A stretch of 63,932 bases of DNA, the filler included, from Octopus bimaculoides (Eukaryota): the NCBI RefSeq assembly GCF_001194135.2. It is 6 parts of 6 records of this genome, joined end to end, with 100 filler letters (N's around TTAATTAATTAA, not from the genome) between each part and the next. Parts side by side here need not be neighbours in the genome. Positions count along the whole stretch, not along the records: positions 39,127 to 51,868 come from NC_069007.1; 5 more parts are not named here. One strand, 5' to 3'. Shown here piece by piece: positions 39,127 through 51,868 of the stretch. The stretch's first letter is position 1, and every line of letters starts with the position of its first letter. The notes under the pieces are model-generated. The model was not told the origin of the DNA, made no database searches, and saw only the letters and a program-made list of their open reading frames with translations. The translations under genes and the position numbers were made by a program.

Positions 39127-39162
<36 letters not shown>

Positions 39163-39277
39163 ACACAGCTAGGTTTTGAACCTAAAACAGTAAGACAATT
39201 ATTTCTCTCTTTTTCTCTCTCTCCAACTCTCTTTACATCTCTCTCTGTCTACTGCTTTCTCTCTCTCTCTCTCTTAC

Positions 39278-39420
39278 CAGAGCAACGGAGGGGTCCAGAT
39301 GATTCAACTTCATACGGGAAGCATGGCAACAGTGGTAAGATTCATCTCCTGTGGTGTTTGTCGACCCAATGTCGACAACAGGTTGGGTGGTGTGTGGGTC
39401 AAGGTAGATCAGTTCATCCT
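39278..39420 (-). CDS. ATG4B: ATG4 internal exon with catalytic Asp/His
   Basis: tatttcag|AG GAT GAA ... GCT CTG|gtaaga. 143 bp, EDELIYLDPHTTQPVVDIGSTNTTGDESYHCCHASRMKLNHLDPSVAL, containing the YLDPH motif. Confidence 0.96.
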
Positions 39421-39669
39421 CTGAAATACAGAGAGGTCAAAGGTTACATTAGCCAGGGAGGAGCCAGAAAGTGTGTGGAAAGGAACACGGGCTGGAGCAA
39501 TCAGACACACTGAAGGACAAACACACACACATATACATATGCGGGATGTGTGTATGTTTATAAGACTCGAACTGAAATTCCACATGCGAATTACATAATT
39601 GCAACATTCTCTATTCAAAACTGGAAATGGTAACTCCCACTATTCCTCACCATGGATTACCATTGAACG

Positions 39670-40052
39670 TTGTTGGCACTCCGTCGCTTACGACGTCGAG
39701 GGTTCCAGTTGATCCGATCAACGGAACAGCCTGCTTGTGAAATTAACATGCAAGTGGCTGAGCACTCCACAGACACGTGTACCTTTAACGTAGTTCTCGG
39801 GGATATTCAGCATGACACAGTGTGACAAGGCTGACCCTTTGAATTACAGGCACAGCAGAAACAGGAAGAAAGAGTGAGAGAAACTTGTGGTGAAAGAGTA
39901 CAGCAGGGTTCGCCACCATCCCCTGCTGGAGCCTCGTGGAGCTTTAGGTGTTTTCGCTCAATAAACACTCACAATGCCCGGTCTGGGAATCGAAACCGCG
40001 ATCCTATGACCGCAAGTCCGCTGCCCTAACCACTGGGCCATTGCGCCTCCAC
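39670..40052 (-). mobile_element. SINE family A, full length, in an ATG4 intron
   Basis: Near-identical to the 26494 copy; 10-bp TSD ACCATTGAAC. Confidence 0.92.
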
Positions 40053-40450
40053 AACCATTGAACATTTTCATTTGAAACTGCTATTGGATATTACCTATAA
40101 CTATATTTTTCATTTGATCACGGATCTCCCTAATGCATTCCTATTTTACTTTGATACTTTCCCCCATTCTTGACAAACTGGGATACACTAACATCATCGA
40201 CTGGGGACCTCCCCTTGCTTTTACATCTCTTTCACTTCTCCCTCTCTGATGACAGGATACTCAGCCTATGGAATCCTTACTTAATATGATGATCCACACA
40301 ATTGGCTATTCTAGAAAAAGCTCAAAAGGGACTCTGTATATCTATATTCTCTAACTCAATTAAATGTCTTTTTCAAGTGATGCCAAACAGTTTGCAACAT
40401 TACAAAATTTCCAAATTGCAGAATTAGAAAAGAATCAGTTTACAACTTAC

Positions 40451-40529
40451 CAAAAGTACCGATAAACCAATGAGCATGGTTCGGTTTCCCACCAATAATT
40501 CCTACTGATTGTTTTAATGACAGACACAT
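40451..40529 (-). CDS. ATG4B: ATG4 internal exon (regulatory loop)
   Basis: ttttccag|ATG TGT ... TTT G|gtaagt. 79 bp, MCLSLKQSVGIIGGKPNHAHWFIGTF. Absent from the ORF track because it is short. Confidence 0.95.
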
Positions 40530-40695
40530 CTGGAAAATAGAAGAAATTAAGAAAAATATTTGTTTCAGATGGGAACGAAATATTTGAGTAGAATTCATTG
40601 AAGGAAATACCTTGCTTGGTGCTAAACCGCTTCAGTTCACACACAAGACACTGAGGGGACAGTGGAAAGTTAGTGAGACTGAACTGGTGGCTATG

Positions 40696-41075
40696 TCATC
40701 ATCATCATCGTCGTTTAACATACGCTTTCCATGCTAGCATGGGTTGGACGATTTGACTGAGGACTGGTGAAAACCAGATGGCTACACCAGGCTCCAATCT
40801 GATTTGGCAGAGTTTCTACAGCTGGATGCCCTTCCTAACGCCAACCACTCAGAGAGTGTAGTGGGTGCTTTTACATGCCACCGGCACGAAGGCCAGTCAG
40901 GTGGTACTGGCAATGGCCACGCTCAAAATGGTGTGTTTTATGTGCCACCCGTACAAGAGCCAGTCCAGGGGCACTGGCAACGATCTCACTCGAAAGTCCT
41001 TACACATGCCGTGGGCACAAGTGCCAGAAAGGCGACGCTGGGCACAGGTGCCATCACAATTTCATTTTTGCTTGC
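40696..41075 (-). mobile_element. Family D retroelement 3' end with (ATG)n tail; copies at about 10010-10200, 19165-19337, 43887-44500 and, in the opposite orientation, 49565-49650
   Basis: Shared CATCATCATCGTTTAAC..CCATGCTAGCATGGGTTGGAC..CAGCTGGATGCCCTTCC. Confidence 0.8.
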
Positions 41076-41701
41076 CCCGTGACTGCGAGAAAAACTTCAC
41101 AACCACAATGCCATGCCTGATTGACCTTTATATAATGTATATGAGTGGCTGTGTGTGGTAAGTAGCTTGCTTACGAACCACATGGTTCTGGGTTCAGTCC
41201 CACTGCGTGGCACCTTGGGCAAGTGTCACGCCGGGTGAAATGCTTAACGGTATTTCGTCTGCTGTTACGTTCTGAGTTCAAATTCCACTGAGGTAGAGTT
41301 TGCTTTTCATCCTTTCAGAGTTGATAAATTAAGTATCAGTTACACACTGGGGTCGATGTAATTGACTTAATCCCTTTTGTCTGTCCTTGTTTGTCCCCTC
41401 TATATTTAGCCCCTTGTGGGCAATAAAGAAATAGGAAACTTCAAGGCATATGTATATGTGACTATTTGGAAGGAGAGGATGATAAAACTTTGGGAAATAA
41501 GTTATTTTTTATTAAACATAACTAGCCCAGGAACCTTTTTTGATACCACCTCAAATGAACCCCCAAAGGGCCATATTGATCCCCAAGGGTCATATTTGAC
41601 CCTTAAGGACCATATTAACCCCAGTTGAGAACCACTGATCTACAGCTGCAGTAAACTTAACTAGGGCCAACAACCGTGTCTTCTGTATTTCAAGACAAGA
41701 T

Positions 41702-42100
41702 ATTGTTTGTTGTTGTTGTTGGCACTCCGTCGCTTACGACGTCGAGGTTTCCAGTTGATCCGATCAACGGAACAGCCTGCTCGTGAAATTAACGTGCAAG
41801 TGGCTGAGCACTCCACAGACACGAGTACCCTTAACGTAGTTCTCGGGGATATTCAGTGTGACACAGAGTGTGACAAGGCTGACCCTTTGAATTACAGGCA
41901 CAACAGAAACAGGAAGTAAGAGTGAGAGAAAGTTGTGGTGGAAGAGTACAGCAGGGTTCGCCAGCATCCCCTGCCGGAACCTCGTGGAGCTCTAGGTGTT
42001 TTCACTCAATAAACACTCACAACGCCCGGTCTGGGAATCGAAACCGCGATCCTATGACCGCGAGTCCGCTGCCCTAACCATTGGGCCATTGCACCTCCAC
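41702..42100 (-). mobile_element. SINE family A, full length, in an ATG4 intron
   Basis: (AAC)n tail; 12-bp TSD TCAAGACAAGAT. Confidence 0.92.
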
Positions 42101-42194
42101 TCAAGACAAGATGATCACAGGCAGAATGTACTGATCAAGGCCAGCCAGGGGTTAAACAACAACAAAAAAAACAAGACTTAGCTAGATAGGTTAC

Positions 42195-42382
42195 CTTGAG
42201 ACTGTTGAAGTATAGAGAATTGATATCGGTCAGTCCGAGCCTGAGAGGAATAATCAGTAACAAGGGTGACCAACTGGACTCTTTTAATGATGAACCTGCT
42301 GTTAGTGGGGAACTGTCCGAGATGGATTTAGATTCTAGCTGACCATTATCACGATTGGTGGTGAAGTTTTTGCACAAAGTCC
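42195..42382 (-). CDS. ATG4B: ATG4 internal exon
   Basis: ccccag|GG ACT TTG ... CTC AAG|gtaacc. 188 bp, RTLCKNF...WSPLLLIIPLRLGLTDINSLYFNSLK; PLRLG is a conserved ATG4 motif. Confidence 0.95.
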
Positions 42383-42471
42383 CTGGGGAAGAAAGAGAGA
42401 AAGAGAAAGTTGAAAGAAAGGATTATCATCATTGTAGATATTATCATCACAATCATCACCATCATCTAGTG

Positions 42472-42749
42472 CAGGGGTTTTCAAACTGTGGTCCGCAAGG
42501 ACAAGACAGGGGTCCGTAGACAGCAAATACTTTTTATGGGCAATTTGATTTTATATATGTTTTTTAATCGAAATCTTTTAATTGACAATAAACCTATTTG
42601 TTAAATACTGCTAAATAAATAAATGTAAAAATATATGTTACTTTAAGCAAATATTTATGTGTAAATTTCATAAGCGTTTATAAGGGGGTCTCTAAGGTAA
42701 AGCCTGAAATATAAAGGGGTCTGCAAGTCAAAAAGTTTGAAAACCCCTG
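42472..42749. mobile_element. hAT (Charlie-like) MITE in an ATG4 intron
   Basis: TIR CAGGGGTTTTCAAACT...AGTTTGAAAACCCCTG; degenerate 8-bp TSD ATCTAGTG/GTATAGTG. Confidence 0.85.
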
Positions 42750-43647
42750 GTATAGTGTTATCATTTCCCTTGTCATTATCATCACCACCTTTTCATTATT
42801 GTCAGCATGCTCATTATCATAATCATTATCGCCATCATCATCATCACCACCAACATCATAATAACCACCATCCTCACCATAATCATCATAATCACCAGTC
42901 ATCATCATCACCATCACCACACCATCATTATCATAACCATCATCATCACCATCATAATGATTGTCATCATCGTCATAACCTCAGCAACAGCAGCAGTAGC
43001 AGCAGCAGCAACAGTATTACTATCATCTCCACCACCCATCATCACCATCATCTCCACCACCCACTTACTTTCATCATCTTTTCAGTCATTTTGACAGCAG
43101 CCATGCTGGAGCACCACCTTAGAAAAATAGTTTTAGTCGAAGAAATCGACCCCAGGACTTATTCTTTGTAAGCCTAGAACATATTTTATCACTCTCTTTT
43201 GCCAAACCGCTAAGTTACAGGGACATAAACACACCAGCATCGGCTGTCAAGCAATGGGAGTGGGAAACAAACACATAAATACACACATAAATATATATAT
43301 ATNNNNNNNNNNAACAGGCTTCTTTCAGTTTCCATCTACCAAATCCACTCACAAGGCTTTGGTCAGCCCAAGGCTATAGTAGAAGACACTTGCCTAAGGT
43401 GCCACGCAGTGGGACTGAACCTTCTTACCACACAGCTACGCCTGCACCTATATACACATACAACAGGCTTCTTTCAGTTTCCATCTACCAGTTTCCATAC
43501 ACAGGGGCTATACAAGACATGCCCAAGGTGCAGCAAAAGTGCATCTTATACACCCATAAATATGGTAAACACTCTGCCCCCCCATCATCTAAAAAAAAAA
43601 AATAAATACATGTGATAGAATAAAAGAGAGAGAGAGACTATACTCAC

Positions 43648-43727
43648 TGATGTCATCTTCTATGATGGTGTTGTCCATGGCTACATGGGTGACAATGGCG
43701 CTCCATTCATCATATACAGACAGCTTC
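43648..43727 (-). CDS. ATG4B: ATG4 internal exon
   Basis: cattag|G AAG CTG ... ATC A|gtgagt. 80 bp, KLSVYDEWSAIVTHVAMDNTIIEDDI. Confidence 0.95.
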
Positions 43728-43759
43728 CTAATGAGAGGAAGATGAAGAATAAAGATAGG

Positions 43760-43799
<40 letters not shown>

Positions 43800-44032
43800 A
43801 TCAGTAGAATAACATATATTGACATGCACACACATATACATACATACATTCATAAACATACATATATGTGCACATGTACACATACATCATGATCACCATC
43901 ATCATCATTTAACGTCCGTTTCCCATGTTGACAGGAGCTGGTAAGGCTTGGGGTTGTTCCAAGCTCCATTGCCTGTCCTGGCATGGTTTCTACAACTGGG
44001 TGCCCTTCCTAATGCCAACCACTCCACAGAGT

Positions 44033-44424
44033 TGTTGTTGTTGTTGGCACTCCGTCGCTTACGACGTTGAGGGTTCCAGTTGATCCGATCAACGGAACAG
44101 CCTGCTCGTGAAATTAACGTGCAAGTGGCTGAGCACTCCACAGACACGTGTACCCTTAACGTAGTTCTCGGGGATATTCAGCGTGACACAGTGTGACAAG
44201 GCTGGCCCCTTTGAATTACAGGCACAACAGAAACAGGAAGTAAGAGTGAGAGAAAGCTGTGGTGAAAGAGTACAGCAGGGTTCGCCACCATCCCCTGCCA
44301 GAGCCTCGTGGAGCTTTAGGTGTTTTCGCTCAATAAACACTCACAACGCCTGGTCTGGGAATCAAAACCGCGATCCTATGACTGCGAGTCCGCTGCCCTA
44401 ACCACTGGGCCATTGCGCCTCCAC
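44033..44424 (-). mobile_element. SINE family A, full length, nested in a family D element
   Basis: 12-bp TSD ACTCCACAGAGT. Confidence 0.92.
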
Positions 44425-44981
44425 ACTCCACAGAGTATACTAGGTGCTTTTCACGTGGCACCAGCACCCGTGTTTTTTCCGTGGCACCAGCACCAGTGTC
44501 AATTCTGCCATGATCAACAGGTCTACTTCAGTACAGCAAGGCACCAGACACATATATACACATACTTACATACACATATATGCATATTAATGCACATACA
44601 TATTCACCTGTAAACACATACACACACAGACATATGCACAAAGACAAATACATTGATAAATGCACACATTTATCTATATGCAGGTATATTAGGTATATTT
44701 ATATTAATAGATCCAATATTCATCATCTGAAAGTCTCCACTCTTTGCTTCCTCTCATTTTGCATCTATACATATTTGTATATTTTGTATTTCACACCCAA
44801 ACTGTTATATTTAATCTGTTTATCTGCACAATTGCCTCTATAACTGCTCAACCTGATCCCTCTTATAGCCATTCATTGCCCCATGAAACTGATCCCCTGT
44901 AAAGACATTGGAGTCTAAGTTTGAATCATTTGAGCACTACTAAGTGTCTTCTATAACGAGAATCTGTGCATCTCATCTGTT

Positions 44982-45017
<36 letters not shown>

Positions 45018-45199
45018 CACATATACATAAGCACATATATACACATATACTTACAAAATCTTGAAAAAATAAATCGAGCATAAGAACCCCAACATACAAT
45101 GGTGAATATGGTAAAGAAACCGAACAAGAAATGGAGAATGTAAAAGACAGAAAATAAGACCAGACGAAAATTCCTGTCAATAATCATCAGCAAACTTAC

Positions 45200-45272
45200 T
45201 TTAAGACTTGAGCTATAGTGTTTGGACCAAACCAACTTCCAACCGTTTTACCTTCAGATACGCCCATTGATG
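45200..45272 (-). CDS. ATG4B: ATG4 internal exon
   Basis: tgttgcag|CA TCA ATG ... TTA AA|gtaagt. 73 bp, ASMGVSEGKTVGSWFGPNTIAQVLK. Confidence 0.95.
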
Positions 45273-45513
45273 CTGCAACAGAAAGAGGACTGTGTAAGAA
45301 TTGGTCGTTTGTAATAACAACAAGAATAAGTCACTTGTTTTTTGAACCTTGAATGGCTATGGGAATCCCTTGAAGTAAAATAGGAACCAAAAGGGGTCCA
45401 GTCCACTAAATGATTGCAGAAGTATAACCAATTTATGGCACCCAAACTTTAACAACAAAATCTCATATGGATCCCAAAGGATCATATGAACCACTGATCT
45501 AGGATGACCTTAC

Positions 45514-45615
45514 CGATTTGATGTATTGAGTAATAAGATGTTCGTTTATCCTGGAAGAGGCTCAGTATCTTTCGGTAGACAGGATCGTTGAGGGAGTCCT
45601 TGGACCAGCGCCAGT
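45514..45615 (-). CDS. ATG4B: ATG4 internal exon
   Basis: atttcag|AC TGG CGC ... ATC G|gtaagg. 102 bp, DWRWSKDSLNDPVYRKILSLFQDKRTSYYSIHQI; phase fits the previous exon. Confidence 0.95.
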
Positions 45616-45727
45616 CTGAAATTAAATGGAATGACTGCATCAGTAGAATTGGGGAGGAGAGATAACAGGATGGAGGTGGGTAAAAAAAAGAGATACAGAG
45701 GGAAAGAAATTAGTAGTCTGCATGTGG

Positions 45728-45784
<57 letters not shown>

Positions 45785-45932
45785 CATATACACACATATG
45801 TATATACATACATAGACACTGTGCATATGAGTGTGAATGAGAGAAAACAAAGAAGGGTGGGTAAGAAAGATACAGAGAGGGGAGAGAAAGGAGTTGTTTG
45901 TGTGTGTATACATACATATATACACAACACAT

Positions 45933-46304
45933 GTTGGCACTCTGTCGCTTACGACGTCGATTAGTTCCAGTTGATCTGATCAACGGAACAGCCTGCTCGT
46001 GAAATGAACATGCAAGTGGCTGAGCACTCCACAGACACGTGTGCCCTTAACGTAGTTCTCGGGGATATTCAGCGTGACAAGGCTGACCCTTTGAATTACA
46101 GGCACAACAGAAACAGGAAGAAAAAGTGAGAGAAAGTTGTGGTGAAAGAGTACAGCAGGGTTCGCCACCATCCCCTGCCGTAGCCTCGTGGAGCTTTAGG
46201 TGTTTTCGCTCAATAAACACTCACAACGCCTGGTCCGGGAATCGAAACCGCGATCCTATGACCGCGAGTCTGCTGCCCTAACCACTGGGCCATTGCGCCT
46301 CCAC
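45933..46304 (-). mobile_element. SINE family A, near full length, in an ATG4 intron
   Basis: Same sequence with a small internal deletion; imperfect TSD. Confidence 0.9.
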
Positions 46305-46336
46305 ACAGAACACACATATACATACATACACTACAT

Positions 46337-46379
<43 letters not shown>

Positions 46380-46777
46380 CATACAAGGTTGTGTATGTGT
46401 GTGTGTATGCATATTAAGGTATCTTTGCCTTGACATCACATGACAACTGTAAATGAGTGTCACTGTCGTGTGAGTGGTGTAGTTTGTTTCCAATTTTCTG
46501 TGAAAACTTGTCCGGTTGCAGGGAAATATCACCTTCTTTGGAAACAGGTGAGGCTTGGTGTGTGTATACTGTGTGTGTATATGTGCATGCATATATGTGT
46601 GTGTGTGCCTTATTCTGCATACAAACATGTGCATTTATATATCTTTAGGCATTATGCTTATATATGTATCTATAGAAACTGCAGCAGAGTATTTAAGAGA
46701 TAAAGGTAAAGATCCCATATACACGTGCGTGTGTGTGTGCACGATTCTATAAACAGACAGCAGCTTGATGTACAAAC

Positions 46778-46876
46778 CTCTACCAAGATGCCTAATCACA
46801 AGGCACTGAGCCATCATCATCTGTCCACACCTGAGCATACATCCCCATCCAGTATCCGTAGTTGGGCCAGTTCCAC
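46778..46876 (-). CDS. ATG4B: ATG4 cysteine protease, internal exon with catalytic Cys (equivalent to human ATG4B exon 4)
   Basis: tttacag|GT GGA ACT ... AGA G|gtttgt. 99 bp, encodes GGTGPTTDTGWGCMLRCGQMMMAQCLVIRHLGR, the peptidase C54 catalytic motif GWGCMLRCGQM. Assignment to the B paralogue is tentative. Confidence 0.96.
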
Positions 46877-47580
46877 CTGTAAACATAAAAACGTAAACAT
46901 TATCAACATCATCATCTACAGCTTTGATTTGAGATCAACTCCCTTCGTTTATCAATATCCACCAAAACATTACATAAGATCGATATCTACCTAGCTAAGC
47001 ACCTGCACACCTAACTAGGTAAGCAGCTAGCCAGAGACACCTAGATAGCTAGCTGGACACCAACCTAGTTAGCTAGTCATATATATAGCTAGCTAGAACC
47101 CCCATTTTGTTACCCAGACACCCTTTGAGTGAATAAGTATCTAGCTGGCGAAATACCTATTTAACTGGTTAACTCTTTTGCTACCATATTTCTGCTGAGA
47201 TGCTCTGTGTTTCTTTCAATTAATTTTAAATATAACAAAGAATTTAGTAAAATAACTTAGTTATCATTAAGCCAGTGTTAGGAACACAAATTGTGACTAA
47301 GGCTTCGTGGAAGATTTTAATTCAGAACTTTTGAAGACAAGACATTTGTACCACAAAGCCAGAGGTGGTTTCAGGTGGGTTGGTATCAAAAGGGTTAAAG
47401 ACTTAACAAGCTAGATTGCCATGTAGCTGCCTAGATACTCATCTAGCCACCTAGATGGCAATCTAACGAGGCTGATGCCTATCCAGCAGTTTAGATACCC
47501 ATTTAGCCAGCCAGATGCCTAAATAACCAGTTTGATACCTATCTAATTAGCTAGGCACCTATCTTGCTGGTTAGGCAACA

Positions 47581-47700
47581 ATCCAGCTGGCTAGGCACCT
47601 ATCAGGCTAGCTAGGTGCCTATCAAGCTGGCTAGGTGCCTATCAGGCTGGCTAGGTACCTATCAGGCTGGCTAGGTACTTATCAAGCTGGCTAAGCACCA
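47581..47700. repeat. 20-bp minisatellite, 6 units, inside a degenerate CTAG-rich zone (about 46990-47820)
   Basis: Consensus ATCAGGCTGGCTAGGTGCCT. Confidence 0.9.
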
Positions 47701-47879
47701 ATCTAACCATCTCAATATCTAACTGACCAGCTAGGTAGCTAGTCAGGAAACTATTCTGCTAACTAGACATGTATCTAGCTAAACAGTCAGCAATCACGAC
47801 ACCTATAGAGGTAGCTAGTCAACAACGAATAAAACAACAGGTATACAAGTCATCAAATATCATATACCCAGACTCATTC

Positions 47880-48180
47880 CTCATTTTAGGAGTGGGTAGC
47901 CACAGTAAGACACACACCAGGCATTCCATTCATTTCCCTCAAAGGGGCAAGCCCTGTTCTATGCTCGGGTCAAGGCATAGAACGCAACCCTCAATATCAG
48001 CAGCGGGGCCCAACAGCATATGCAGGTTTATCCCCGCAGCATCATGCTGGTTGTGTACCCCTTTGGTAACATCAAAATTCACTCATCCGTCCAGAAACAG
48101 TCTCCAAGCTTTCTTATCATTTATAAACTCTCTTGCCTCTCTCACTCCAACGACCTCTGACCACCAAAGCTTTCCTCACT
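47880..48180 (-). mobile_element. RTE-like LINE 3' end; about 70 bp repeated at 48633-48698
   Basis: ...RGRWSEREAREFINDKKAWRLFLDG* matches the AxDRxxWR end of RTE ORFs. Confidence 0.55.
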
Positions 48181-48325
48181 CTGTCCATCCACTCAATGTG
48201 GATATCACACCCGTTTTATCAAACCCGTTTTATAGGTAGAGATACTAAGTTGAAGTGATGCATTTTGAGTAGATATGAATAATAATAATAAATGGAGCAA
48301 AACGCATATAAATAAAAGTTGCTTT

Positions 48326-48416
48326 AATTCCTACATATGTTTCAAAATATATGTGCACTCTACTCCAAAGAAGTAAGAGCTGCTGGAATTGCACATATAT
48401 TCATCGTCAGGGAACC
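48326..48416 (-). ncRNA. Type I hammerhead ribozyme motif (Penelope-type)
   Basis: GGTTCC CTGACGA TGAATATATGTGCA..32 nt..TGCACATATATTTT GAAA CATATGTA GGAATT. Intact CUGANGA and GAAA core, 12 Watson-Crick pairs in stem II, palindromic stem III ACATATGT, GUA triplet. Confidence 0.7.
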
Positions 48417-49844
48417 AACATATAGAAGCAAGACAAATGTGAAATGATGAGGTAAGTTACAAGTTATAATATTACATGGCCAAGTAAGTGACCGTTAGAA
48501 ATAAGAACGCTTGTTTACATAGAGTTATAAAGGGAGTAATAATATTACATGGCCATGTAATGTCATAAACACCTGTACGTTGTAGGTTTTTTTTTTTTTT
48601 TTGTCACTTTAGCTATGAATTAAATTAATGAATTCACTCATTTGTCCAGAAACACTCTCCACGCTTTCTTATCATTTATAAACTCTCTTGCCTCTCTCNN
48701 NNNNNNNNNNNNNNNNNNNNNNNNNNNNNNNNNNNNNNNNNNNNNNNNNNNNNNNNNNNNNNNNNNNNNNNNNNNNNNNNNNNNNNNNNNNNNNNNNNNN
48801 NNNNNNNNNNNNNNNNNNNNNNNNNNNNNNNNNNNNNNNNNNNNNNNNNNNNNNNNNNNNNNNNNNNNNNNNNNNNNNNNNNNNNNNNNNNNNNNNNNNN
48901 NNNNNNNNNNNNNNNNNNNNNNNNNNNNNNNNNNNNNNNNNNNNNNNNNNNNNNNNNNNNNNNNNNNNNNNNNNNNNNNNNNNNNNNNNNNNNNNNNNNN
49001 NNNNNNNNNNNNNNNNNNNNNNNNNNNNNNNNNNNNNNNNNNNNNNNNNNNNNNNNNNNNNNNNNNNNNNNNNNNNNNNNNNNNNNNNNNNNNNNNNNNN
49101 NNNNNNNNNNNNNNNNNNNNNNNNNNNNNNNNNNNNNNNNNNNNNNNNNNNNNNNNNNNNNNNNNNNNNNNNNNNNNNNNNNNNNNNNNNNNNNNNNNNN
49201 NNNNNNNNNNNNNNNNNNNNNNNNNNNNNNNNNNNNNNNNNNNNNNNNNNNNNNNNNNNNNNNNNNNNNNNNNNNNNNNNNNNNNNNNNNNNNNNNNNNN
49301 NNNNNNNNNNNNNNNNNNNNNNNNNNNNNNNNNNNNNNNNNNNNNNNNNNNNNNNNNNNNNNNNNNNNNNNNNNNNNNNNNNNNNNNNNNNNNNNNNNNN
49401 NNNNNNNNNNNNNNNNNNNNNNNNNNNNNNNNNNNNNNNNNNNNNNNNNNNNNNNNNNNNNNNNNNNNNNNNNNNNNNNNNNNNNNNNNNNNNNNNNATA
49501 TATATATATATATATATATACGATGGGCTTCTTTCAGTTTCCGTCTACCAAATCCACTCACAAAGCCATCTGGTTCACCAGTCCTCAGTCAAATCGTCCA
49601 ACCCATGCTAGCATGGAAAGCGGACATTAAATGATGATGATGATGATGATGGTGATGAATGTGAATAAACAAACATTACATCTAACAGAGTGATTTGTAT
49701 GTTAAGAGGTTAAATCAGTTATATCAAGTCCAAATATGTTCCAGAGGTCACCTCTCATACCTATCTTTCAATGCTATCCAAAAATTATACAATCACGCCA
49801 TATATTGCTTGATTAATTCAAAATAATGTGAATAAATAAGCACT

Positions 49845-50190
49845 GCATGAGACAGTGGTTAGGGTGTCAGGCTCACAATCATGAGGTAGTGAGTTCAATT
49901 TCCAAACCAGGCTGTGTGTTGTGTTCTTGAGCAAGACACTTTATTTCACGTTGCTCTAGTTCCCTCAGCTGTAGAAATGAGTTGTGACATCACTAGTGCC
50001 AAGCTGTATCGGCCCCTTTGCCTTTCCCTTGGATAATATCAGTGACATGGAGAGGAGAGACTGGTATGCATGGGCGACTGCTAGTCTTCCACAAACAACC
50101 TTGTCCGGAATTGTGCCTCAGACGGTAACTTTCTAGGTGCAATCCCATGGTCAGTCATGATTCAAGGGGGTTTTCACCCTTTTACATTTG
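49845..50190 (+). mobile_element. tRNA-derived SINE of another family
   Basis: AGTGGTTAGGG..GAGTTCAATTTCC..GTGTTCTTGAGCAAGACACTTT, ends CCCTTTACATTT. Confidence 0.7.
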
Positions 50191-51102
50191 ACAGAGNNNN
50201 NNNNNNNNNNNNNNNNNNNNNNNNNNNNNNNNNNNNNNNNNNNNNNNNNNNNNNNNNNNNNNNNNNNNNNNNNNNNNNNNNNNNNNNNNNNNNNNNNNNN
50301 NNNNNNNNNNNNNNNNNNNNNNNNNNNNNNNNNNNNNNNNNNNNNNNNNNNNNNNNNNNNNNNNNNNNNNNNNNNNNNNNNNNNNNNNNNNNNNNNNNNN
50401 NNNNNNNNNNNNNNNNNNNNNNNNNNNNNNNNNNNNNNNNNNNNNNNNNNNNNNNNNNNNNNNNNNNNNNNNNNNNNNNNNNNNNNNNNNNNNNNNNNNN
50501 NNNNNNNNNNNNNNNNNNNNNNNNNNNNNNNNNNNNNNNNNNNNNNNNNNNNNNNNNNNNNNNNNNNNNNNNNNNNNNNNNNNNNNNNNNNNNNNNNNNN
50601 NNNNNNNNNNNNNNNNNNNNNNNNNNNNNNNNNNNNNNNNNNNNNNNNNNNNNNNNNNNNNNNNNNNNNNNNNNNNNNNNNNNNNNNNNNNNNNNNNNNN
50701 NNNNNNNNNNNNNNNNNNNNNNNNNNNNNNNNNNNNNNNNNNNNNNNNNNNNNNNNNNNNNNNNNNNNNNNNNNNNNNNNNNNNNNNNNNNNNNNNNNNN
50801 NNNNNNNNNNNNNNNNNNNNNNNNNNNNNNNNNNNNNNNNNNNNNNNNNNNNNNNNNNNNNNNNNNNNNNNNNNNNNNNNNNNNNNNNNNNNNNNNNNNN
50901 NNNNNNNNNNNNNNNNNNNNNNNNNNNNNNNNNNNNNNNNNNNNNNNNNNNNNNNNNNNNNNNNNNNNNNNNNNNNNNNNNNNNNNNNNNNNNNNNNNNN
51001 NNNNNNNNNNNNNNNNNNNNNNNNNNNNNNNNNNNNNNNNNNNNNNNNNNNNNNNNNNNNNNNNNNNNNNNNNNNNNNNNNNNNNNNNNNNNNNNNNNNN
51101 NN

Positions 51103-51135
<33 letters not shown>

Positions 51136-51825
51136 ACGGGCTTTTTTCAGTTTCCATCTACCAAATCCACTCACAAGGCTTTGGTTGGCCCGAGGCTATA
51201 GTAGAAGACACTTGCCCAAGATGCCACGCAGTGGGACTGAACCCAGAACCTGCCAGTTCCCTCCACTTAAAATGTATAATTTTATCCCTTAACTGATTGA
51301 AATTCATTAAAATGGGAAACCCTGCCCATTAGAATATGTAGCTCTGTCCCTTAATTGACAATTAGCACCCATTAAAACATGTAACCACATCCCTTAAACA
51401 GCTTTTCCATTAGAATGTGTAACTGTAAGCCCATTGTTTTTGTTTAGCCCAAGGTCAGCCATCTTCAGGACTAATTGAAAGTGTTCCAATCATGACCATA
51501 ACATCTATTTGTATGCAAGAGACTTATATACAATTGCATTCTTCTTAATTTAAGACAGCAGAGTGTGATTTGAGAGAGGTATGATTACTATTTCTAGCAA
51601 GTCAACCGACCACAAACAGGCTCGTTTGCTGGCTTATCATTCCTGCAGTTCAGAGTGGGAGTGGGTAAGAGAAGGAGGAGGAGTAGCAAAACACAAACAC
51701 TAGCATGTGACTGTACAGATGATGCCTGTGTGATTGTATCCACATATCTGTGTTCTGTAGACTTTAGACATAACAAACAACAATTCTAATCAAATACATC
51801 TATCTATCTCTATATATACATATGT

Positions 51826-51868
<43 letters not shown>

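What the first reader, a model, noticed from the sequence alone, without database searches (positions are those of the whole stretch)
48326..48416. Hammerhead ribozyme with an intact core, in sense orientation in a probable ATG4 intron
Seen: the minus strand reads GGTTCC-CTGACGA-[12 Watson-Crick pair stem II closed by G.U and U.U]-GAAA-C-ATAT-GT-A-GGAATT, with a predicted cut at 48332/48331. It is about 1.45 kb upstream of the first recovered ATG4 exon, which starts mid-codon, and no earlier ATG4 exon was found in between, so it probably lies in the pre-mRNA. Established: minimal type I hammerheads with palindromic stem III are typical of Penelope-like elements and often cleave as dimers; intronic hammerheads have been retained in amniote genes. 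Inference: a Penelope-derived ribozyme that could cut ATG4 pre-mRNA. The non-canonical U10.1.U11.1 closing pair may reduce activity.
Basis: partly seen in the sequence, partly recalled or inferred. Interest (0 to 1): 0.72.

Follow-up and report, generated by a model that had tools for sequence, protein, structure and literature searches.

The report
Orphan hammerhead-like motif in ATG4 intron
The intron of an autophagy protease gene (ATG4) carries one sequence with every core base of a hammerhead self-cleaving RNA, most likely a stranded relic of a mobile element or a lucky look-alike, and nothing shows that it cuts the gene's RNA.

Summary
They comprise a full hammerhead core, helix I (6 bp as read, 8 bp if extended), a 60-nt helix II that opens with U.U and G.U followed by 12 Watson-Crick pairs, a 2-bp helix III inside the palindrome ACAUAUGU, and A17 at 48332.

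The motif lies 1,454 nt upstream of the ATG4 exon that encodes the catalytic cysteine, on the same strand. The roughly 62 N-terminal residues are not encoded anywhere in the piece, so an intronic position is probable.

A motif this complete is not expected by chance in 11 kb. It appeared in 0 of 2000 shuffles and 0 times in a 66-Mb Markov simulation.

Family membership is weak:
- No Rfam hammerhead model matches, even at E<=10 on 99 nt.
- The motif fails a published type I descriptor.
- G10.1-C11.1 is absent.
- It is single-copy in the piece.
- Its flanks are poly(A)-type LINE tails, with no Penelope reverse transcriptase or endonuclease.
- No related genome sequence could be reached.

Known active animal hammerheads do share the U.U helix II base and the 2-bp palindromic helix III.

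Best reading: an orphan minimal type I hammerhead relic, predicted to be slow or inactive as a monomer. Chance is the main rival. A regulatory role for ATG4 is unsupported. The finding is ordinary.

The parts
48411..48418 (-). Helix I, 5' strand (UUGGUUCC).
   Evidence: It pairs with 48331-48324 as C-G, C-G, U-A, U-A, G.U, G.U, U-A, U-A.
48404..48410 (-). Core C3 U4 G5 A6 C7 G8 A9 (CUGACGA)
   Evidence: It is one of 6 CTGANGA sites in the piece, a count that matches chance.
48344..48403 (-). Helix II: a 60-nt imperfect hairpin. Its base is U.U then G.U, followed by 12 Watson-Crick pairs (48401-48390 with 48346-48357), then a distal bulge and two short stems.
   Evidence: Pair list. The hairpin is kept in every predicted fold, including the fold with 80 nt of context on each side. 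The arm sequence ATATATGTGCA recurs in the piece's low-complexity tracts, e.g. 43862-43873.
48341..48343 (-). Core G12 A13 A14
48333..48340 (-). Helix III with loop 3: the palindrome ACAUAUGU (A15.1-U16.1, C15.2-G16.2, loop AUAU)
   Evidence: As a monomer the 2-bp stem costs +0.6 kcal/mol. Two copies form an 8-bp intermolecular helix (-7.0 kcal/mol) and the classical double hammerhead.
48332..48332 (-). A17. The predicted scissile bond lies between 48332 and 48331.
   Evidence: The GUA triplet conforms to the NUH rule (established knowledge).
48324..48331 (-). Helix I, 3' strand (GGAAUUAA)
48206..48577 (-). A 372-nt AT-rich block (GC 32.5%) that holds the motif and lies between two LINE 3' fragments. 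It is single-copy within the piece.
48578..48698 (-). LINE/SINE 3' end A: ORF tail ...REAREFINDKKAWRVFLDK*, a short 3' UTR and an A17 tail. Its 5' part is lost in the N gap 48699-49497.
   Evidence: (repeat D12)
47900..48205 (-). LINE 3' end B, 5'-truncated: ...EWMDRVRKAL..REAREFINDKKAWRLFLDG* followed by its 3' UTR. The low end is approximate.
   Evidence: (D12, 94% identical to copy A over 68 nt)
46776..46877 (-). ATG4 exon encoding GGTGPTTDTGWGCMLRCGQMMMAQCLVIRHLGR (catalytic Cys). It has an AG acceptor, phase 1 and a GT donor.
   Evidence: Homologues carry Pfam PF03416 Peptidase_C54.

Best explanation
This is a solitary minimal type I hammerhead motif of the kind that animal retroelements carry (Penelope-like element repeats and non-LTR retrozymes). 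It sits in sense orientation in the intron ahead of the catalytic-cysteine exon of an ATG4A/B-like gene.

Shown:
- All invariant core positions are present: C3-A9, G12-A14, A15.1-U16.1 and H17.
- Helix I has 6-8 bp.
- Helix III is a 2-bp stem inside an 8-nt palindrome.
- Helix II is a long hairpin with a weak base (U.U, G.U, then A-U pairs).

Inferred:
- It is a stranded relic of an older hammerhead-bearing element. Two later LINE insertions now bracket it.
- As a single copy it should cleave very slowly or not at all. Helix III is unstable in a monomer. No loop-loop contact between helices I and II is recognisable. Only about 0.2% of the predicted ensemble is hammerhead-compatible.
- Polymerase needs only about 1.45 kb to reach the next exon, so splicing should outrun any residual cleavage and ATG4 output should be unaffected.
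- Efficient cutting would need a second copy to form the double hammerhead through the palindromic helix III.
For: The core and all pairings were verified.

A motif of this completeness was absent from 2000 shuffles and from 66 Mb of Markov-simulated sequence. No chance hit had a palindromic helix III.

One is palindromic 15.2-16.2/loop 3. The other is a nucleotide between A9 and a G at 10.1, if U48403 is read as the extra base (PMC4209133).

The same architecture, a U.U mismatch at the base of helix II with a 2-bp helix III capped by a tetraloop, is described for about 60,000 axolotl HHR_Amex2 motifs. Those self-cleave weakly as monomers and well as dimers (PMC7229834). Perreault et al. also report active natural U10.1-U11.1 hammerheads (PMC3088659).

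Two copies cofold into the double hammerhead at -55.8 kcal/mol, against 2 x -24.1 for monomers.

The block is AT-rich (32.5% GC), like animal retrozyme units. CpG observed/expected is 0.44, so a C11.1pG12 to U11.1pG12 decay is a plausible origin of the weak helix II base (inference).

Against: - No Rfam hammerhead family (types I, II, III, HH9, HH10) appears at E<=10 in 12.7 kb, 191 nt or 99 nt searches, although other families are listed down to 6 bits. The 60-nt helix II may account for part of this.
- The motif fails the published RNAMotif type I descriptor. Stem III is below 3 bp, helix I has two consecutive wobbles, and stem II has only 3 bp in the allowed register.
- The 'highly conserved' G10.1-C11.1 pair is missing.
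- A helix II of 13 bp with a 32-nt distal part is far longer than the 4-8 bp typical of animal hammerheads.
- There is a single copy, with no tandem or inverted partner, no Penelope coding remnant and no pseudo-LTR nearby.
- No homologous copy could be retrieved, so there is no covariation evidence at all.
Confidence: 0.55

Rival explanations
1. Chance look-alike. An ordinary AT/TG-rich hairpin of the kind that litters this intron happens to be flanked by CTGACGA and GAAA, and by short complementary stretches. On this reading it was never a ribozyme.
For: - The hammerhead core is only 11 fixed bases. Perreault et al. warn that consensus-conforming sequences arise by chance in large data sets and that false positives are rich in wobble pairs (PMC3088659). 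Helix I here has two adjacent G.U pairs, and helix II opens with U.U and G.U.
- The CTGANGA count in the piece equals the chance expectation.
- The piece has 29 regions with >=10-bp hairpins in 11 kb, and the arm sequence recurs in microsatellite-like tracts.
- There is no Rfam hit, no second copy and no retroelement context that carries hammerheads.
- Loose matches occur at 0.2-0.8 per Mb, which is hundreds to thousands in a Gb-sized genome.
Against: - Matches as complete as this one (6-8-bp helix I, long helix II, palindromic helix III) were absent from 66 Mb of simulation and from 2000 shuffles.
- A rough calculation that takes real hairpin density as given yields an order of 0.1-1 such site per Gb-sized genome (inference).
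- The palindromic helix III and the U-then-G after A9 are family hallmarks that the search pattern did not impose.
Confidence: 0.33
2. A host-retained, catalytically active intronic ribozyme. It cleaves nascent ATG4 pre-mRNA in kinetic competition with splicing and so tunes ATG4 levels, as proposed for the amniote intronic hammerheads and the Cpeb3 HDV-like ribozyme.
For: The motif is in sense orientation in a probable intron, 1,454 nt ahead of the next exon. The core is intact. There is precedent that an intronic ribozyme can lower expression through competition with splicing (PMC10919898).
Against: - No conservation data are available.
- No HH9 or HH10 match was found.
- The 2-bp helix III, the absence of tertiary loop contacts and a 0.2% hammerhead-compatible ensemble predict very slow monomer cleavage.
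- PLE minimal hammerheads show low activity in vitro even as dimers (PMC4209133).
- In vertebrates, retrozymes are depleted from introns. That suggests such insertions are selected against rather than co-opted (10.64898/2026.07.22.740005).
Confidence: 0.05
3. The 60-nt hairpin is the functional unit, for example a microRNA precursor or another structured RNA, and the hammerhead-like flanks are irrelevant.
For: The hairpin is the one robust element in all folds. There are weak Rfam hits to hairpin miRNA families, such as mir-3145 at 16.7 bits.
Against: Those hits are far below the gathering scores (16.7 against 98 bits). They belong to the same class as the mir-297 and mir-3149 hits on plain (TA)n/(TG)n repeats elsewhere in the piece. 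The folding z-score is only -2.3.
Confidence: 0.03

Closest known systems
Minimal type I hammerheads of Penelope-like elements (Cervera and de la Pena 2014, PMC4209133)
   Same: Type I topology and a full core. Helix II is longer than canonical. A nucleotide can be read between A9 and G10.1. Positions 15.2-16.2 and loop 3 are palindromic, which implies action as dimers. Low intrinsic activity is expected. Most genomic copies of this class are solitary.
   Different: G10.1-C11.1 is replaced by G.U (or U.U). Helix II is 13 bp plus a 32-nt distal part, against 6-8 bp. No pseudo-LTR or RT/GIY-YIG ORF lies nearby. The flanks are poly(A) LINE tails. No family of copies is available.
Non-LTR retrozyme hammerheads of animals, especially axolotl HHR_Amex2 (Cervera and de la Pena 2020, PMC7229834)
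   Same: A U.U mismatch at the base of helix II, a 2-bp helix III capped by a tetraloop, an AT-rich host unit of a few hundred bp, and better cleavage predicted as a dimer.
   Different: Retrozymes occur as tandem repeats that each carry a hammerhead, with conserved loop 1/loop 2 contacts. Here only one copy is seen, helix II is very long and no loop-loop contact is recognisable.
Conserved intronic hammerheads of amniotes (Rfam HH9 and HH10) and the intronic Cpeb3 ribozyme
   Same: Sense-strand position inside an intron of a protein-coding gene. The conceivable mechanism is competition between self-scission and splicing.
   Different: Those are stable monomeric ribozymes conserved across species. 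This motif matches neither Rfam model, has an unstable helix III, and its conservation is unknown.

Membership tests
Hammerhead ribozyme (class) | Invariant core: C3 U4 G5 A6 N7 G8 A9, G12 A13 A14, A15.1-U16.1, H17 | tested here: met
   CUGACGA at 48410-48404, GAA at 48343-48341, A48340-U48333, A17 at 48332
Hammerhead ribozyme (class) | Three helices radiating from the core | tested here: met
   Helix I has 6-8 bp, including two adjacent G.U pairs. Helix II has a 13-bp main stem after a U.U. Helix III has only 2 bp. The hammerhead-compatible fold is 2.3 kcal/mol above the MFE and makes up 0.2% of the ensemble.
Hammerhead ribozyme (class) | Conserved G10.1-C11.1 pair closing helix II | tested here: not met
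Natural active exceptions with U.U exist (PMC3088659; PMC7229834).
Hammerhead ribozyme (class) | Match to an Rfam hammerhead covariance model (Hammerhead_1, _3, _II, HH9, HH10) | tested here: not met
   No hammerhead family is listed at E<=10 in searches of 12,742, 191 and 99 nt. The 60-nt helix II insertion probably costs many bits, so this is weaker than it looks.
Hammerhead ribozyme (class) | Fits the published RNAMotif type I descriptor (Perreault et al. 2011, Text S1) | tested here: not met
   The descriptor needs a stem III of >=3 bp; here it is 2 bp with a 4-nt loop. It rejects two consecutive wobbles, which helix I has beyond 4 bp. Stem II is only 3 bp in the allowed 'one extra base' register (applied). 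The descriptor targets monomeric ribozymes.
Hammerhead ribozyme (class) | Tertiary contact between helix I and helix II loops (needed for fast cleavage at cellular Mg2+) | tested here: inconclusive
   Helix I runs 8 bp with no internal loop, and the first interruption of helix II lies 14 pairs from the core. No canonical loop 1/loop 2 geometry is evident, but this cannot be excluded by sequence alone.
Hammerhead ribozyme (class) | Site-specific self-cleavage after position 17 | not testable with these tools
   Needs in vitro transcription or RNA end mapping.
Hammerhead ribozyme (class) | Conservation and covariation among homologous copies | not testable with these tools
   No related sequence could be reached. 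Window ORFs are not on record. The ATG4 exon search returned no close relative of this gene. A high-copy SINE ORF has no relatives in the collection. The motif pattern is absent from the metagenome and prokaryote genome collections.
Penelope-like element hammerhead | Lies in a pseudo-LTR next to an RT/GIY-YIG ORF, or belongs to a recognisable PLE repeat family | tested here: not met
   No Pfam domain appears in six frames of 46878-48698, 49498-50196 or 51103-51868. The flanks are poly(A)-type LINE ends. Two N gaps and the usual solitary state of such motifs leave this open. No PLE consensus library was available.
Penelope-like element hammerhead | Palindromic 15.2-16.2/loop 3, and an extra nucleotide between 9 and 10.1 | tested here: met
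   ACAUAUGU is a perfect palindrome, and U48403 followed by G48402 can be read as extra base plus G10.1 (criteria from PMC4209133).
Animal non-LTR retrozyme | Tandem repeats of about 150-400 bp, each with a type I hammerhead | tested here: not met
   There is a single copy in the piece, with no repeat of the 372-nt block. The gap at 48699-49497 lies beyond an intervening LINE tail.
Conserved intronic hammerheads (HH9/HH10 type) | Sense-strand intronic position in a protein-coding gene | tested here: met
   The motif is on the same strand as seven ATG4 exons. The N-terminal exons are absent between the motif and exon 46877-46776, and anywhere else in the piece. The intronic position is inferred, not shown by transcript data.
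Conserved intronic hammerheads (HH9/HH10 type) | Cross-species conservation of the ribozyme at the orthologous site | not testable with these tools
   No orthologous locus could be retrieved.

The most novel reading that the evidence does not exclude
The motif is a catalytically competent hammerhead kept by selection in the ATG4 intron of cephalopods. It cleaves nascent pre-mRNA, possibly as a dimer with a copy hidden in the adjacent assembly gap or with a second transcript. This would set ATG4 (autophagy protease) output by competing with splicing, making it an invertebrate counterpart of the amniote intronic hammerheads.
Probability: 0.04. Interest if true: 0.6.

Novelty: new member of a known kind. 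Interest (0 to 1): 0.22.

Why it matters
If it is a genuine relic, it adds one more solitary retroelement-type hammerhead to the many thousands already catalogued in animal genomes. It says little beyond the fact that such elements once moved in this lineage. It would matter only if the motif proved conserved at this intron and active, because self-cleaving RNAs that regulate host genes from introns are few and none is known for an autophagy gene. Nothing found here points that way.

Tried and rejected
- Rfam at three window sizes returned no hammerhead hit. The strong-looking mir-297, mir-3149 and mir-1277 hits elsewhere are plain (TA)n/(TG)n microsatellites, far below gathering scores.
- I tried to reach the source or related genomes. 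Exact-product look-ups of two window ORFs found nothing. The ATG4 exon search returned only distant exon fragments with at most 88% identity. A high-copy SINE ORF had no relatives. A 25-base motif pattern with a variable gap had no hits in the metagenome or prokaryote genome collections. Orthology and repeat-family tests were therefore impossible.
- I looked for Penelope coding remnants by six-frame Pfam scans of all sequenced DNA from 46878 to 51868 and found none.
- I looked for a second or partner hammerhead and for any other copy of the 372-nt block in the piece and found none.
- I considered that the motif belongs to one of the flanking LINE copies and rejected it. Copy A ends in poly(A) at about 48578, upstream of the block, and copy B is 5'-truncated at about 48205, downstream of it.
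- I considered a tRNA or miRNA reading. ARAGORN finds nothing, and the miRNA hits are noise.
- I did not build my own covariance model. Without trusted homologous sequences it would only restate my descriptor.

Full report
**1. The observation**

On the minus strand, 48416->48326 reads GGTTCC CTGACGA [60 nt] GAAA C ATAT G T A GGAATT. The 60-nt stretch pairs as U48403.U48344, G48402.U48345, then twelve Watson-Crick pairs (48401-48390 with 48346-48357). Beyond an asymmetric bulge it forms two more short stems.

In hammerhead numbering:
- C3-A9 is 48410-48404.
- G12-A14 is 48343-48341.
- A15.1-U16.1 is 48340/48333, and C15.2-G16.2 is 48339/48334.
- A17 is 48332, so the scissile bond is 48332|48331.

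Every element of the description is correct.

**2. Is it more than chance?**

- In 2000 dinucleotide shuffles, the loose descriptor hits 0.002 times per piece and the as-found stringency hits 0 times.
- In 66 Mb generated from an order-3 Markov model of the piece, loose hits occur at 0.76/Mb and hits with a 6-bp helix I at 0.15/Mb. Hits with a 6-bp helix I and a >=6-bp helix II occur 0 times. None of the 50 loose hits has a palindromic helix III.

Two caveats apply. Loose hits would number hundreds to thousands in a Gb-sized genome.

The real sequence is also far richer in hairpins than any shuffle, with 29 regions of >=10-bp hairpins in 11 kb. The arm sequence ATATATGTGCA recurs in the local microsatellite-like tracts. 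Taking hairpin density as given, a rough calculation still gives only about 0.1-1 such complete site per Gb-sized genome (inference).

**3. Gene context**

Seven ATG4 (Peptidase_C54) exons lie on the minus strand: 46877-46776, 45628-45488, 45273-45199, 43735-43649, 42308-42183, 40535-40446 and 39418-39278. Homologues of the first exon carry PF03416.

The exon at 46877 follows ...tttacag, starts in phase 1 and encodes the catalytic-cysteine motif. The roughly 62 residues that precede it in ATG4A/B, including the conserved WxTYR segment, are not encoded in any minus-strand frame of the piece. They must lie in the N gaps (48699-49497, 50197-51102) or beyond 51868.

The motif is therefore probably intronic and in sense, 1,454 nt ahead of the next exon. 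This is an inference, since no transcript data are available.

**4. Immediate surroundings**

The motif sits in a 372-nt, 32.5% GC block (48206-48577) that is single-copy in the piece.
- Upstream on the minus strand, at 48698-48578, is the 3' end of a non-LTR element. It has an ORF tail REAREFINDKKAWRVFLDK*, a short UTR and an A17 tail.
- Downstream, from about 48205, is a 5'-truncated copy of a related element (EWMDRVRKAL...REAREFINDKKAWRLFLDG*), 94% identical to the first over 68 nt.

The W.D.V...DR..WR pattern is typical of RTE/CR1-like LINE ORF2 C-termini (my knowledge; not tested against a library).

No Pfam domain appears in any frame of 46878-48698, 49498-50196 or 51103-51868. Nothing Penelope-like (reverse transcriptase, GIY-YIG) is nearby. 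There is no second hammerhead-like site and no other CTGANGA site with suitable flanks.

**5. Family tests**

No Rfam hammerhead model is listed at E<=10 in searches of 12,742, 191 or 99 nt, although other families are listed down to 6-8 bits. I consider this only moderately informative, because a 60-nt helix II would be heavily penalised by models built on 4-8-bp helices (inference).

Against the published RNAMotif type I descriptor (PMC3088659 Text S1) the motif fails on three counts:
- Stem III is below 3 bp.
- Helix I has two consecutive wobbles.
- Stem II has only 3 bp in the permitted 'one extra base' register.

That descriptor was written for monomeric ribozymes.

Against the criteria of Cervera and de la Pena for Penelope-like element hammerheads (PMC4209133), the results are mixed:
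- Palindromic 15.2-16.2/loop 3 is met.
- The extra nucleotide before G10.1 can be read, with U48403 as the extra base and G48402 as 10.1.
- The 'highly conserved' G10.1-C11.1 is not met, being G.U in that register.
- The family-with-covariation criterion cannot be tested.

CpG observed/expected is 0.44, with TG/CA excess. A C11.1pG12 to UpG decay of an ancestral G-C pair is therefore plausible, but it is speculation.

Perreault et al. found natural active hammerheads with exactly this mismatch. The roughly 60,000 axolotl HHR_Amex2 motifs combine a U.U at the base of helix II with a 2-bp helix III capped by a tetraloop. They self-cleave weakly as monomers and efficiently as dimers (PMC7229834).

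**6. Likely behaviour**

For the isolated 91-mer, the hammerhead-compatible fold is -21.8 kcal/mol against an MFE of -24.1, which is about 0.2% of the ensemble. The 2-bp helix III is slightly destabilising. With 80 nt of context on each side, only the helix II hairpin survives in the MFE.

Two copies cofold into the classical double hammerhead with an 8-bp helix III, at -55.8 against 2 x -24.1 kcal/mol. That fits the dimer mode described for animal type I hammerheads, but only one copy is visible here.

PLE minimal hammerheads cleave poorly in vitro even as dimers. Intronic ribozymes act through kinetic competition with co-transcriptional splicing (Cpeb3, PMC10919898). With only about 1.45 kb to the next exon and a predicted slow or absent monomer reaction, I expect no measurable effect on ATG4 (inference).

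In vertebrates, retrozymes are depleted from introns. That speaks for selection against such insertions rather than co-option.

**7. Weighing**

For a real hammerhead-derived relic:
- The motif is complete and statistically rare.
- It has family hallmarks that the search did not impose.
- The same odd architecture is documented in active animal hammerheads.
- Penelope families are present in octopus genomes, if that is the source (PMC13282606).

For chance:
- The core is short, the stems are wobble-rich and AT-rich, and the background is hairpin-rich.
- There is no Rfam support, no second copy and no hammerhead-bearing element around it.
- There are no homologues to test.

My estimates are relic 0.55, chance 0.33, host-selected regulator 0.05 and other hairpin RNA 0.03.

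**8. Verdict**

At best this is one more orphan member of a very large, well-described class. The step that would settle it is a search of the source genome and its relatives for copies and orthologues, which these tools could not reach.

Noticed in passing
window 39669-40053, 41715-42101, 44040-44425, 45931-46305: Four copies of a repeat of about 385 nt, with 96% mean column identity. Its high-coordinate end (the minus-strand 5' end) looks tRNA-derived (GGTTCGATTCC-type T-arm), so it is probably a young tRNA-SINE that has repeatedly colonised the ATG4 introns in one orientation. ARAGORN calls no tRNA in it.
   Followed up: partly
window 47497-47790 (core 47537-47705): A minisatellite of a 20-nt unit (consensus ACCTATCTAGCTGGCTAGGC, about 8-15 copies, 81-84% matches). 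It lies just downstream, on the minus strand, of the truncated LINE copy B and may be that element's 3' tail. A weaker 3-copy relative sits at 47035-47097.
   Followed up: no
window 43289-43421, 49498-49566, 51111-51243; also 40696-40771 inverted with 49574-49649: A second short repeat family that starts right after (TA)n tracts. Three of its copies abut assembly gaps (N runs 43303-43312, 48699-49497, 50197-51102). This suggests that (TA)n plus this repeat is what broke the assembly.
   Followed up: no
window 43756-43885, 44981-45050, 45714-45840, 46308-46645, 51794-51868: Rfam 'evalue' hits to mir-297, mir-3149, mir-1277, mir-466 and similar families (30-50 bits, against gathering scores of 75-101) all fall on (TA)n/(TG)n/(CA)n microsatellites. 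They are low-complexity artefacts, not miRNA genes.
   Followed up: yes
window 42737-43171: An imperfect trinucleotide-type repeat (ATC/ACC-rich) between ATG4 exons, which translates as long His/Asp/Ile-rich pseudo-ORFs on both strands. It is intronic low-complexity DNA, not coding sequence.
   Followed up: no
window 39127-51868 (whole piece): There is strong CpG depletion (observed/expected 0.44) with TG and CA excess (1.26 and 1.34), consistent with germline methylation of this gene body.
   Followed up: partly
window 48462-48487 and 48535-48560; 48203-48233: Small direct repeats lie inside the block that holds the motif. GGCCATGTAATATTAT... occurs twice, 73 nt apart (92% over 26 nt; the upstream copy is itself partly palindromic), and there is a 14-nt unit x2.2 (TATCAAACCCGTTT). 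Their origin is unexplained.
   Followed up: no
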